In this document: positions 154 to 1,154 of the stretch, piece by piece
Numbering within the stretch: position 1 is the first letter of the stretch
Layout: each line of letters opens with the position of its first letter
Assembly: GCF_006345805.1 (NCBI RefSeq)
Contig: NC_042998.1
Coordinates: 206,274,001 to 206,338,000, forward strand
From: Octopus sinensis
Taxonomy: Eukaryota
Length of the DNA: 64,000 bases
Direction of reading: 5' to 3'
Notes under the pieces: model-generated
Databases searched by the model: none
Told to the model about the DNA's origin: nothing
What the model saw: only the letters and a program-made list of their open reading frames with translations
Position numbers and translations under genes: made by a program

Positions 154-406
154 GGTGGGCACAGGAAGGGGTCTCGCTTGTCACAGGGATGAGGGGCTCA
201 CATGGTCAGGGGTTTGGGTTTGTCTCTGGAAGTTGGGTCACAGATGGGGTCTCGGGAGGTCACAAAAGTTGTCTCGGGGTTTCAGGGTTACAGAAGGGGT
301 TCGGGTTAGGGGTTAGGGGTAGAGTTAGGGCTCAATTTCCATTGAAATACTCTTTCTTTGCTTCAAATAATTTTGAACATAATAAAATTTCTGCTTCAGT
401 TTTCAG

Positions 407-522
407 ACATCAACGAGTGTTTAAGGAATCCTTGTCGTTATGGTGCCATATGTCAGAATTTCCTAGGTTCGTACCGTTGTGCGTGCAAACTAGAATTCGA
501 TTACATCGACCCCAGCGCGTAA
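407..522 (+). pseudogene. Calcium-binding EGF-like exon, copy 1 (open frame, [38 protein letters not shown]), lacks Cys6
   Basis: Pyrimidine-rich acceptor TTTTCAG, phase-1 start, EGF_CA consensus D-I-N-E-C..C..C..N..GSY.C.C. The last 8 codons and the stop come from the SINE fragment. Confidence 0.8.
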
Positions 523-583
523 CTGGTACTTATTTAATCGACCCCGGTAGGACCCCTCGGCGGAATTTGAACTCAGAACGTAA
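497..583 (-). mobile_element. Internal fragment of tRNA-derived SINE family B fused to the EGF exon (present in all 12 complete cassettes)
   Basis: Matches dispersed copies at 36079-36307 and 40753-40978 (TCGATTACATCGACCCCAG.GCGTAACTGGTACTTATTTAATCGACCCC...CCTCGGCGGAATTTGAACTCAGAACGTAA), but with a shortened internal segment shared across the array. Confidence 0.88.
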
Positions 584-1154
584 TGATAATAATAATAATA
601 ATAATAATAAAGACATTGTTACCTTGATAACCTTGTACCAATATGTCTTGTTGAGAACTAAATACACACGCACACAACATATAAACACACGCATGACAAT
701 ACATAAAGACATTCTTTCTTGTTTAATGTGTTTATATGTACATATACATAAGAATATGAACTCACTCGTGAATAGTGAATTGATTTCAATCTTCTAAATT
801 AGAATTCAATAAAGGAAGCCATATACGAATCAATGTATAATAAACTATTGACACTCACACTTGTCGCCAGTATAAATATATAGACTGTTTTATTAATATA
901 TACATCGACACAATACACACACGTATGAGTATACATTCTGTTTCACTTTTTGTTTTCAGGAACATAAATTTTATTTCATTTTTCTGTTTTTTTAAAATCC
1001 ATTATGTAATTTTACTCGGATTTATAAAGATATAAATAACAATGTCTTATAGTTTTCTTGTTTCTTAGCTATTTTTTATATTTCTCTCTTGAAATAGTTT
1101 TTTTGTTATGTTTATAACAACACACATCTTTTATATTATTGTTAATATTGTTAA

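What the first reader, a model, noticed from the sequence alone, without database searches (positions are those of the whole stretch)
380..850. Every cassette carries a spliceable EGF_CA exon that a SINE fragment has turned into a stop-containing, terminal-like exon
Seen: acceptor (pyrimidine tract + CAG), phase-1 start, and [28 protein letters not shown](P/L)EF with five of six EGF cysteines. A mid-body SINE B fragment then supplies DYIDPSA*. AATAAA motifs follow (606, 808, 839 in copy 1). Seven of 12 complete copies keep the frame (1, 3, 6, 7, 8, 9, 12); the other five fail by small indels that could be read errors. The shortened SINE segment GACCCCGGTAGGACCCC is shared across the complete copies, so the fusion predates amplification. 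Known: phase 1-1 EGF_CA exons are typical of Notch/fibropellin/fibrillin-type genes. Inference: the cassette is the broken end of such a gene, either dead cargo or a bank of alternative last exons with telomeric introns.
Basis: partly seen in the sequence, partly recalled or inferred. Interest (0 to 1): 0.7.

Follow-up and report, generated by a model that had tools for sequence, protein, structure and literature searches.

The report
Dead EGF exon in telomere-repeat array
A real but truncated fragment of a calcium-binding EGF exon, fused to a piece of a SINE, has been copied at least 13 times as passive cargo inside a tandem array that alternates telomere-like repeats with a 0.8-kb piece of gene; nothing suggests the exon is still used.

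Summary
Each complete unit carries a pyrimidine tract and CAG, then a phase-1 start and [28 protein letters not shown](P/L)EF. This scores as Pfam EGF_CA at 37.8 bits with five of six cysteines. A SINE-derived tail follows, giving DYIDPSA*. Copies 1, 3, 6, 7, 8, 9 and 12 keep the frame.

The exon lies in an 824-bp AT-rich block flanked on both sides by telomere-like repeats in one orientation. The whole unit is repeated head to tail over at least 32 kb: a degenerate TTAGGG tract, an 18-bp minisatellite, a G-rich spacer and the block. The order of variant repeats within the tracts is shared between units, so the units were copied as DNA.

Differences between copies are mostly singletons, and about half are indels, which points to read noise. 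The exon is no better preserved than other 117-bp windows of the block. Substitutions are 6 synonymous to 16 non-synonymous, and cysteines are lost.

The SINE piece is truncated at both ends and the rest of the exon is absent, so this was a deletion or fusion, not a clean insertion. No donor gene or gene model was found. The closest analogues are the TALT elements of C. elegans and mouse. Use as alternative last exons is untested and unlikely.

The parts
1..32435 (+). Head-to-tail higher-order tandem array. It continues beyond the left edge of the window and is cut by the scaffold gap on the right. Each unit is a telomere-like tract, an 18-bp minisatellite, a G-rich spacer and an 824-bp AT-rich genic block.
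   Evidence: blastn of copy 1 against the window gives 12 full copies and 1 cut copy at 94-96% identity. Segment map. TRF.
33..158 (+). 18-bp minisatellite (TCTC[CG]GGAATTGGTGGGG)n of unit 1. There are 4-9 copies per full unit, it is found only in the array, and it is on the + strand only.
   Evidence: 104 matches, none beyond 32126, none on the minus strand
154..330 (+). G-rich spacer that ends in degenerate telomere-like repeats (GGGTTAGGGGTTAGGGGTAGAGTTAGGG) directly abutting the AT-rich block. It is conserved in all units.
   Evidence: alignment of all units
331..1154 (+). 824-bp AT-rich block of ordinary genic DNA (copy 1). It comprises an intron 3' end, a truncated exon, a SINE piece, (AAT)n and AT-rich sequence, ending ...ATTGTTAA|GGGTTAG.
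386..406 (+). Pyrimidine tract plus CAG acceptor immediately before the EGF_CA start (phase 1). It is ancestral to the captured exon.
   Evidence: Acceptor-like motifs occur about once per kb per strand in the unique half of the window, so it is the placement at the domain boundary that is informative.
407..493 (+). EGF_CA-coding part of the exon ([30 protein letters not shown]) with five of six cysteines. The junction with SINE-derived sequence lies somewhere in 481-498.
   Evidence: Pfam EGF_CA 37.8 bits. PROSITE patterns. Junction.
494..583 (+). Internal fragment of a SINE, truncated at both ends and with a 14-nt internal deletion. It supplies (EF)DYIDPSA and the TAA at 520-522.
   Evidence: blastn against three SINE copies in the window, q73-176 of 246. 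Alignment A1.
584..611 (+). (AAT)n microsatellite of variable length between copies. Its end creates the first AATAAA (606-611).
808..844 (+). Two further AATAAA hexamers (808-813, 839-844).
   Evidence: Three hexamers against 0.84 expected, P = 0.057.
1155..2247 (+). Degenerate telomere-like tract (TTAGGG/TTGGGG/TTGGG) of unit 1. Tracts are 0.48-2.3 kb in the 12 units, and the order of variant repeats is shared between units.
   Evidence: TRF 78-86% matches. In-register alignment of 12 tract starts.
2594..2709 (+). exon copy 2 (compensating +1/-1 indels, middle scrambled)
4549..4664 (+). exon copy 3 (frame kept)
7213..7327 (+). exon copy 4 (frameshifted)
9829..9945 (+). exon copy 5 (frameshifted)
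12173..12288 (+). exon copy 6 (frame kept)
14122..14237 (+). exon copy 7 (frame kept, CAC to CLC, P to L)
16294..16409 (+). exon copy 8 (frame kept, third cysteine changed to Gly)
18850..18965 (+). exon copy 9 (frame kept, stop TAA changed to TCA). The block is interrupted downstream by a transposon at 19489-20433.
21402..21518 (+). exon copy 10 (frameshifted)
24826..24940 (+). exon copy 11 (frameshifted, Cys to Arg)
27366..27481 (+). exon copy 12 (frame kept, equals the consensus). The block is interrupted downstream by transposon insertions at 27868-29485 and 29628-31362.
32374..32435 (+). exon copy 13, cut by the 100-N scaffold gap
11108..11170 (+). Cassette-less unit: 2-5 minisatellite repeats running straight back into the telomere-like tract. 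The same junction GGAATTGGT|AAGGGTC occurs at 18170-18235 and 26612-26712.

Best explanation
The exon is a passenger pseudo-exon. A fragment of about 0.82 kb from a gene with EGF_CA repeats became flanked on both sides by telomere-like repeats of one orientation. The fragment holds the end of an intron, its acceptor, the first two thirds of a phase-1 EGF_CA exon already fused by deletion to the middle of a decayed SINE, and AT-rich intron-like DNA.

The composite unit was then amplified head to tail at the DNA level. The likely routes are unequal exchange, break-induced replication or rolling-circle copying between the telomere-like tracts. This produced an array of at least 32 kb associated with telomere repeats.

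The reading frame survives in the consensus because the copies are young, not because it is selected. Most frame-breaking differences are probably sequencing noise.

Shown:
- the anatomy of the unit;
- the co-amplified telomere-like tracts;
- the absence of any detectable constraint on the exon;
- the truncated SINE piece.

Inferred:
- how the fragment was captured;
- the recombination mechanism of amplification;
- that the exon is not spliced.
For: 1. The exon is real. EGF_CA scores 37.8 bits, both PROSITE patterns match, and the acceptor sits exactly at the D-I-N-E-C start in phase 1.
2. The 824-bp block abuts telomere-like sequence on both sides in all copies...GGGGTAGAGTTAGGG|CTCAATTTCC on the left and ...ATTGTTAA|GGGTTAGGG on the right.
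3. The telomere-like tracts share the order of variant repeats, for example a TTGGGG x3 run at the same offset. They fall into subfamilies: the tracts after copies 6, 9 and 12 are nearly identical. They were therefore copied with the unit, not added afresh by telomerase.
4. Three cassette-less units share one junction and recur after every three cassettes. Copies 9 and 12 carry a transposon at the same site. This indicates multi-unit DNA duplication.
5. There is no constraint on the exon.
   - Variant density is 0.21 per column in the exon against 0.31 elsewhere, not significant.
   - Seven of 12 copies are indel-free, a value equalled or beaten by 24% of all 117-bp windows of the block. Substitutions are 23 against a mean of 22.3.
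   - Substitutions are 6 synonymous to 16 non-synonymous, with cysteine codons changed in three copies (4, 8 and 11) and a stop loss.
6. Singletons outnumber shared variants 206 to 42 and indels are about as frequent as substitutions, which points to noise.
7. The window holds no other EGF exon.
8. No database protein contains the peptide or the other long frame of the unit. The same database holds a transposase 97% identical in protein and 98.1% in DNA to one in this window.
9. There is a direct precedent. [quoted passage not shown] It is amplified tandemly in telomeres (PMC4595603). Mouse mTALT behaves the same way (PMC7889907).
Against: - No transcript data could be examined, so use of the acceptor is not excluded.
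- The donor locus was not found, so the capture event is reconstructed from the cassette alone.
- The array is a noisy contig attached to the rest of the scaffold only through a 100-N gap. Its TTAGGG strand points toward the unique DNA, which is the wrong way for a chromosome end joined there. Its chromosomal position (terminal or interstitial), copy number and fine sequence are therefore uncertain.
- The consensus frame is intact and the acceptor is good, as expected for a young pseudo-exon but also for a used one.
Confidence: 0.75

Rival explanations
1. The copies form a bank of alternative last exons. A gene to the left of the window, or a TERRA-like transcript, reads through the array in the + sense. 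It splices into one of the acceptors, across introns made of UUAGGG repeats, and ends at the SINE-derived stop and the AATAAA signals.
For: - There is a good acceptor in the right phase, and the consensus has an in-frame stop.
- Three AATAAA hexamers lie 85-320 nt downstream.
- The exon and the TTAGGG strand are on the same strand, so a UUAGGG-containing transcript would carry the exon in sense.
- mTALT arrays are transcribed in mouse.
Against: - There is no constraint on the exon: including loss of cysteines.
- The polyA hexamers are near chance (P = 0.057).
- The unit holds no upstream exon or strong donor.
- A domain lacking its sixth cysteine could not fold as an EGF domain (established knowledge of the three-disulphide EGF fold).
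- No gene model contains the peptide.
Confidence: 0.05
2. The gene was broken in place. A chromosome broke inside an EGF-repeat gene and was healed by telomere addition. The innermost copy of the array is still continuous with the upstream exons of that gene, and the other copies are later duplications of the healed end.
For: - The right-hand junction ...TGTTAA|GGGTTAGGG looks like a healing junction.
- The array continues beyond the left edge of the window, so an innermost copy could lie there.
Against: - All 12 left-hand junctions seen are to G-rich or telomere-like sequence, not to further intron.
- The unique DNA across the gap holds no EGF exon.
- This rival concerns origin only and is compatible with the exon being dead cargo.
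Confidence: 0.12
3. The array is an assembly artefact. It was built from a few noisy long reads, and its copy number, order and many differences are not real.
For: - Divergence of 4-6% is made mostly of singletons, half of them indels.
- The contig ends mid-exon at a 100-N gap.
- The orientation is odd for a chromosome end.
Against: - Structural variation is orderly. Tract subfamilies, three identical deletion junctions, nested transposon insertions with their own ORF fragments and different minisatellite counts are not what random error gives.
- The cassette itself is certainly real.
Confidence: 0.06
4. The cassette is a non-autonomous telomere-targeting retroelement. It would be added repeatedly to chromosome ends, with telomerase re-extending between additions, as with HeT-A/TART or the Athena Penelope-like elements.
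For: Head-to-tail units in one orientation are separated by telomere repeats of variable length.
Against: - There is no poly(A) or reverse-complement telomere primer at either end, and no RT or Gag coding capacity.
- Rfam and Pfam find nothing in the unit apart from EGF_CA.
- Tract variants are shared in register between units, so the tracts are copies and not new synthesis.
Confidence: 0.02

Closest known systems
C. elegans TALT1/TALT2 (templates for alternative lengthening of telomeres; Seo et al. 2015, PMC4595603)
   Same: [quoted passage not shown] The gene fragment is cargo.
   Different: - TALT amplification across telomeres was shown in telomerase-deleted survivors. Here there is no information on telomerase status, on terminal location, or on presence at other chromosome ends.
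- This unit also holds an 18-bp minisatellite and a G-rich spacer.
- Its telomere-like tracts are long (0.5-2.3 kb) and degenerate.
Mouse mTALT (Kim et al. 2021, PMC7889907)
   Same: It is a subtelomeric element flanked by telomeric repeats with uniform directionality and duplicated head to tail. Its copy number varies naturally between strains.
   Different: mTALT is 7.4 kb, and it is transcribed and functionally tied to ALT in embryonic stem cells. None of this has been tested here.
Saccharomyces cerevisiae Y' elements (own knowledge; mentioned in PMC4595603)
   Same: These are subtelomeric units in short tandem arrays separated by internal telomere-repeat tracts and amplified by recombination.
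   Different: Y' is 5-7 kb and encodes a helicase-like ORF. The present unit has no intact coding capacity.
Human D4Z4/DUX4 macrosatellite (own knowledge)
   Same: It is the nearest model for the 'bank' reading. It is a subtelomeric tandem array in which every unit carries a reading frame, and expression depends on a polyadenylation signal.
   Different: D4Z4 units hold a complete ORF and are not separated by telomere repeats. Here the coding piece is two thirds of one domain.
Calcium-binding EGF module, class 1-1 exon (Pfam PF07645; module shuffling reviewed in PMC3927616)
   Same: It has the N-terminal D-x-N-E-C calcium site, the Asx-hydroxylation consensus and a phase-1 acceptor at the domain start.
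   Different: The sixth cysteine, the C-terminal G-[FY] turn and the phase-1 donor are gone and are replaced by SINE sequence. The best database relatives are only 50-61% identical generic EGF_CA arrays.

Membership tests
EGF_CA domain (PF07645 / PROSITE PS01187) | Profile score above the curated threshold | tested here: met
   37.8 bits against a cut-off of 27, E 2.2e-9, profile positions 1-35 of 43
EGF_CA domain (PF07645 / PROSITE PS01187) | Calcium-binding N-terminus [DEQN]-x-[DEQN](2)-C and Asx-hydroxylation site C-x-[DN]-x(4)-[FY]-x-C-x-C | tested here: met
   Both regular expressions match DINEC...[12 protein letters not shown]
EGF_CA domain (PF07645 / PROSITE PS01187) | Six cysteines forming three disulphides; C-x-C-x2-[GP]-[FYW]-x(4,8)-C end | tested here: not met
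   There are five cysteines and the EGF_2 pattern is absent. No remainder of the domain lies downstream in any frame.
Class 1-1 (phase 1 / phase 1) module exon | Phase-1 acceptor at the domain start | tested here: met
   cag|AC ATC AAC GAG TGT, with the first base of the Asp codon supplied by the preceding exon
Class 1-1 (phase 1 / phase 1) module exon | Phase-1 donor after the sixth cysteine | tested here: not met
   The frame runs into SINE sequence and a TAA. There is no domain end and no donor.
SINE retroposition into the exon | Sequence homology to a SINE family of the same genome | tested here: met
   74-81% identity over about 100 nt to three copies in the window. Alignment A1.
SINE retroposition into the exon | Element with intact 3' end or tail and target-site duplication, target sequence resuming downstream | tested here: not met
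   Only positions 73-176 of about 246 are present, with a 14-nt internal deletion. The fragment runs into (AAT)n, and the rest of the exon is absent.
Functional terminal exon | Acceptor, in-frame stop and a polyA signal beyond chance | tested here: inconclusive
   The acceptor and the stop are present in the consensus. AATAAA occurs 3 times against 0.84 expected, P = 0.057.
Functional terminal exon | Purifying selection on the coding part | tested here: not met
   Substitutions are 6 synonymous to 16 non-synonymous, with cysteine and stop losses. The exon window is not better preserved than the rest of the block.
Functional terminal exon | Spliced, polyadenylated transcripts | not testable with these tools
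   No transcript data were available. No gene model in the protein database holds the peptide.
TALT-like telomere-associated cassette | Unique block flanked by telomere-like repeats in the same orientation | tested here: met
   Both junctions are conserved in all units, and TTAGGG is on the + strand only.
TALT-like telomere-associated cassette | Head-to-tail tandem amplification together with telomere repeats | tested here: met
   There are 13 cassettes over 32 kb, and tract variants are shared in register.
TALT-like telomere-associated cassette | Location at chromosome ends, spread to several ends, and use in telomerase-independent maintenance | not testable with these tools
   The contig is joined by a 100-N gap and its orientation is opposite to that of a terminal array at that join. 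The whole assembly, reads and cytology were not available.

The most novel reading that the evidence does not exclude
The array is transcribed in the TERRA sense, giving RNA that contains UUAGGG. Each unit's ancestral acceptor, SINE-derived stop and AATAAA would then process that RNA into spliced, polyadenylated telomeric transcripts, or into alternative 3' ends of an upstream EGF-repeat gene. On this reading a captured exon fragment has been co-opted as an RNA-processing module inside telomere-associated DNA. A milder version is that the array is a natural TALT-like reservoir used for recombination-based end maintenance in this animal.
Probability: 0.06. Interest if true: 0.7.

Novelty: new member of a known kind. 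Interest (0 to 1): 0.3.

Why it matters
As an exon, it matters little. It is a young pseudo-exon and should not be annotated as coding.

The array around it is a clear natural example of a gene fragment trapped between telomere-like repeats and amplified with them. This architecture is known mainly from the TALT elements of C. elegans and mouse. By its SINEs, which I recognise from memory and did not verify with a tool, the genome looks like an octopod cephalopod. I know of no report of such arrays in that group.

If the array is truly terminal, it would give a handle on how subtelomeres are built in these genomes. It also warns annotators about noisy, gap-joined telomeric contigs.

Tried and rejected
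- **Donor search by protein.**
  - A 40-aa query holding the peptide found no protein sharing three 5-residue words.
  - A full HMMER scan of 1.84 billion representatives gave only generic EGF_CA arrays at 50-61% identity. The ranking is dominated by repeat number.
  - This negative is weak. The database does hold close relatives of a transposase of this window, but those are mostly short Logan and ENA contigs whose ORF calls would miss a 40-codon exon.
- **Other frame of the unit.** A consensus ORF of about 174 codons in another frame, searched with its first 131 residues, has no homologue. It is open only because the DNA is G-rich.
- **Exact DNA scan.** A scan of JGI metagenome contigs for the exon found nothing.
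- **Exact-protein look-ups.**
  - The second transposase ORF of the window is not on record.
  - No window copy encodes the consensus ORFs exactly, so the cassette could not be looked up.
- **Rfam.** No match anywhere in the window.
- **Species identification.** Run and analysis accessions and cluster-member names gave nothing.
- **Other EGF exons.** A regular-expression scan of all six frames found none outside the array.
- **Rejected readings.**
  - A telomere-specific retroelement: no tail, no RT, and the tracts are copies.
  - Selection keeping 7 of 12 frames: the sliding-window control shows this is typical of the block.
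Full report
**What is there.** Window 1-32435 is one long head-to-tail array. Each full unit has four parts:
- a degenerate telomere-like tract of 0.48-2.3 kb, made of TTAGGG mixed with TTGGGG and TTGGG, at 78-86% TRF matches;
- 4-9 copies of an 18-bp minisatellite, TCTC[CG]GGAATTGGTGGGG;
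- a G-rich spacer of about 175 bp that ends in degenerate telomere-like repeats;
- an 824-bp AT-rich block (331-1154 in unit 1) that ends ...ATTGTTAA and runs straight into the next tract.

TTAGGG is on the + strand throughout and never on the other strand. The array continues past the left edge of the window. On the right it stops in the middle of a thirteenth exon copy at a 100-N scaffold gap (32436-32535). Beyond the gap lies ordinary DNA rich in transposons and SINEs, with no telomere repeats, no minisatellite and no EGF exon.

**The observation.**
- The block opens with 67+ nt of intron-like sequence ending in a pyrimidine tract and CAG.
- The next base starts, in phase 1, [28 protein letters not shown](P/L)[12 protein letters not shown].
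- The peptide scores 37.8 bits on Pfam EGF_CA (cut-off 27, E 2.2e-9).
- It satisfies the PROSITE EGF_CA and Asx-hydroxylation patterns. It has five cysteines and lacks the end of the domain.
- Acceptor-like motifs are common, about one per kb per strand in the unique half of the window. There are two more inside the block itself. What counts is that this one sits exactly at the domain boundary in the phase typical of class 1-1 modules (PMC3927616). That makes it an ancestral exon boundary. It does not show present use.
- Frames are kept in copies 1, 3, 6, 7, 8, 9 and 12 and lost in 2, 4, 5, 10 and 11.
- AATAAA is at 606, 808 and 839.

**The SINE piece.** Homology to three SINE copies elsewhere in the window covers 494-583. 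These copies lie at 36080-36312 on the minus strand, and at 40559-40746 and 40740-40985. The homology corresponds to positions 73-176 of an element of about 246 nt.
- Homology may extend 10-15 nt further 5', so the junction lies between 481 and 498, within the codons for C-A-C-K-P-E-F.
- The fragment lacks both the head and the tail of the SINE, has no target-site duplication, and runs into an (AAT)n microsatellite.
- The missing third of the EGF exon is not found downstream in any frame.
- This is therefore not a clean retroposition into an exon. A deletion or other rearrangement joined mid-exon to mid-SINE, most simply a SINE that already lay in the downstream intron.

**Are the frame failures real, and is the frame protected?** I aligned 12 copies of the block.
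- 206 variant alleles are singletons and 42 are shared. Indels are about as frequent as substitutions. Evolutionary divergence normally shows far fewer indels than substitutions, so most of the 4-6% apparent divergence is sequencing or assembly noise.
- A few variants are genuinely shared: P to L in copies 1, 7 and 8; P to T in copies 9 and 10; a TAA insertion in copies 3, 8, 9 and 12.
- The consensus is an intact frame.
- The exon is not preserved better than its surroundings. Its variant density of 0.21 per column, against 0.31 elsewhere, is not significantly lower.
- In a sliding-window control, 24% of all 117-bp windows of the block have at least seven indel-free copies. The exon window carries 23 substitutions against a mean of 22.3.
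- In the coding part, substitutions are 6 synonymous to 16 non-synonymous. They include cysteine-codon changes in three copies (4, 8 and 11) and one stop loss.
- Three AATAAA against 0.84 expected gives P = 0.057, and one of them is a by-product of the microsatellite.
- Nothing here indicates selection. The copies are too similar for a dN/dS estimate to mean much.

**How the array grew.** When aligned from the junction, the telomere-like tracts share the order of their variant repeats. All begin with a run of TTAGGG followed by TTGGGG x3 at the same offset.
- They fall into subfamilies. The tracts after copies 6, 9 and 12 are almost identical, as are those after copies 2 and 10.
- One tract has a 359-bp internal period at 95% identity.
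- Three units lack the G-rich spacer and the block and share a single junction, GGAATTGGT|AAGGGTC. It resembles the normal end of the block (ATTGTTAA|GGGTTAG) and looks like a microhomology deletion.
- These short units recur after every three cassettes, at spacings of 7.06 and 8.44 kb.
- Copies 9 and 12, the first cassette after each of the last two short units, carry a transposon of the same family at the same site.
- Copy 12 has a second insertion of that family. Its insertions contain piggyBac-like and mariner-like ORF fragments, as judged by eye and not scanned, and a 116-bp tandem repeat.
- Together these show copying of the whole unit, and of blocks of several units, as DNA, followed by transposon invasion. 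They do not fit repeated telomerase healing or retrotransposition.

**Search for the donor and for use.**
- A 40-aa query containing the peptide found no protein sharing three 5-residue words among 5.8 billion clusters.
- An exhaustive HMMER scan of 1.84 billion representatives returned only generic multi-EGF_CA proteins whose repeats are 50-61% identical.
- A consensus ORF of about 174 codons in another frame of the unit, searched with its first 131 residues, has no homologue. A metagenome DNA scan was empty.
- As a positive control, a Tc1 transposase of this window has a 97% identical protein in the database. It lies on a Logan contig that is 98.1% identical in DNA. Close relatives of this genome are therefore represented, but mostly as short contigs whose ORF calls would miss a 40-codon exon.
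- The absence of a gene model ending in this peptide is weak evidence against use. The absence of a donor is uninformative.
- The organism could not be named with the tools. From my own recollection its SINEs look octopod, and TTAGGG is the reported cephalopod telomere repeat (PMC6160780).

**Best explanation.** The exon is a passenger pseudo-exon inside a telomere-associated higher-order repeat.
- The closest described systems are the TALT elements. [quoted passage not shown] It is flanked by two telomere-like sequences in one orientation and arranged tandemly in telomeres (PMC4595603). Mouse mTALT is flanked by telomeric repeats of uniform direction, is duplicated head to tail, and varies in copy number between strains (PMC7889907).
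- The present array meets the two structural criteria: a block flanked in one orientation, and tandem amplification together with the repeats.
- Terminal location, spread to other chromosome ends and use in end maintenance cannot be tested here.
- One caution applies. As scaffolded, the TTAGGG strand points toward the unique DNA, and the transposon-laden, apparently oldest units lie next to the gap. A true chromosome end joined at that gap would have the opposite strand orientation. The contig is therefore flipped or misplaced, or the array is interstitial.

**Rivals.**
- Alternative last exons or processing of TERRA-sense RNA: about 5%. The exon is in sense with UUAGGG-containing RNA, which keeps the idea alive, but nothing else supports it.
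- A gene broken in place, with the innermost copy still attached to its gene: about 12%. This concerns origin only and is compatible with dead cargo.
- A largely artefactual array: about 6%. The orderly structural variants argue against it.
- A telomere-targeting retroelement: about 2%.

**Verdict.** The array is a new member of a known kind. Interest is modest for the exon and somewhat higher for the array as a natural TALT-like structure.

Noticed in passing
window 32436-32535: A 100-N scaffold gap cuts the thirteenth exon copy mid-codon. The array's TTAGGG strand points toward the unique DNA beyond the gap, which is the wrong polarity for a chromosome end joined there. The contig may be flipped or misplaced, or the array may be interstitial.
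   Followed up: partly
window 11108-11170, 18170-18235, 26612-26712: Three cassette-less units have 2-5 minisatellite repeats running straight back into the telomere-like tract. They share one junction, GGAATTGGT|AAGGGTC, and recur after every three cassettes. This indicates a deletion derivative that was re-copied in multi-unit blocks of about 7-8.4 kb.
   Followed up: partly
window 19489-20433, 27868-29485, 29628-31362: Insertions of one transposon family (start CTAGCAGTATCGCCCGGCGTTGCTCGG, end ...AAGAGA) lie in cassette copies 9 and 12. The insertion in copy 9 and the second insertion in copy 12 are at the same site. ORF fragments at 28814-29137(-) and 30250-30558(-) look piggyBac-like and mariner-like by eye; they were not scanned.
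   Followed up: partly
window 28156-28871: A 116-bp tandem repeat, 6.2 copies at 98% identity, lies inside the first transposon insertion of cassette copy 12.
   Followed up: no
window 12934-13767: A telomere-like tract has a 359-bp higher-order period (2.3 copies, 95% identity). The tracts therefore have internal duplications of their own.
   Followed up: no
window 40040-40192: A short palindromic (MITE-like) element has arms that share the same core (TCGATTACATTGACCCCAG...GGTACTTAATTTATCGACCCC) as the SINE and the cassette fragment. The core appears to be shared by more than one element family.
   Followed up: no
window 40559-40985: Two SINE copies lie in direct tandem about 184 bp apart. 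The second is full-length to its tail and the first is cut short.
   Followed up: no
window 49082-50117: A Tc1/mariner transposase (HTH_Tnp_Tc3_2 plus DDE_3) is split by a frameshift. It is 98.1% identical in DNA to the Logan contig SRR9969997_683875. This is the only external sequence found close to this genome.
   Followed up: yes
window 11955-12479 and equivalents in each unit: An open frame of about 174 codons runs from the G-rich spacer through the exon, in a different frame, and through the (AAT)n run. It has no homologue and is best explained by a lack of stop codons in G-rich DNA.
   Followed up: yes
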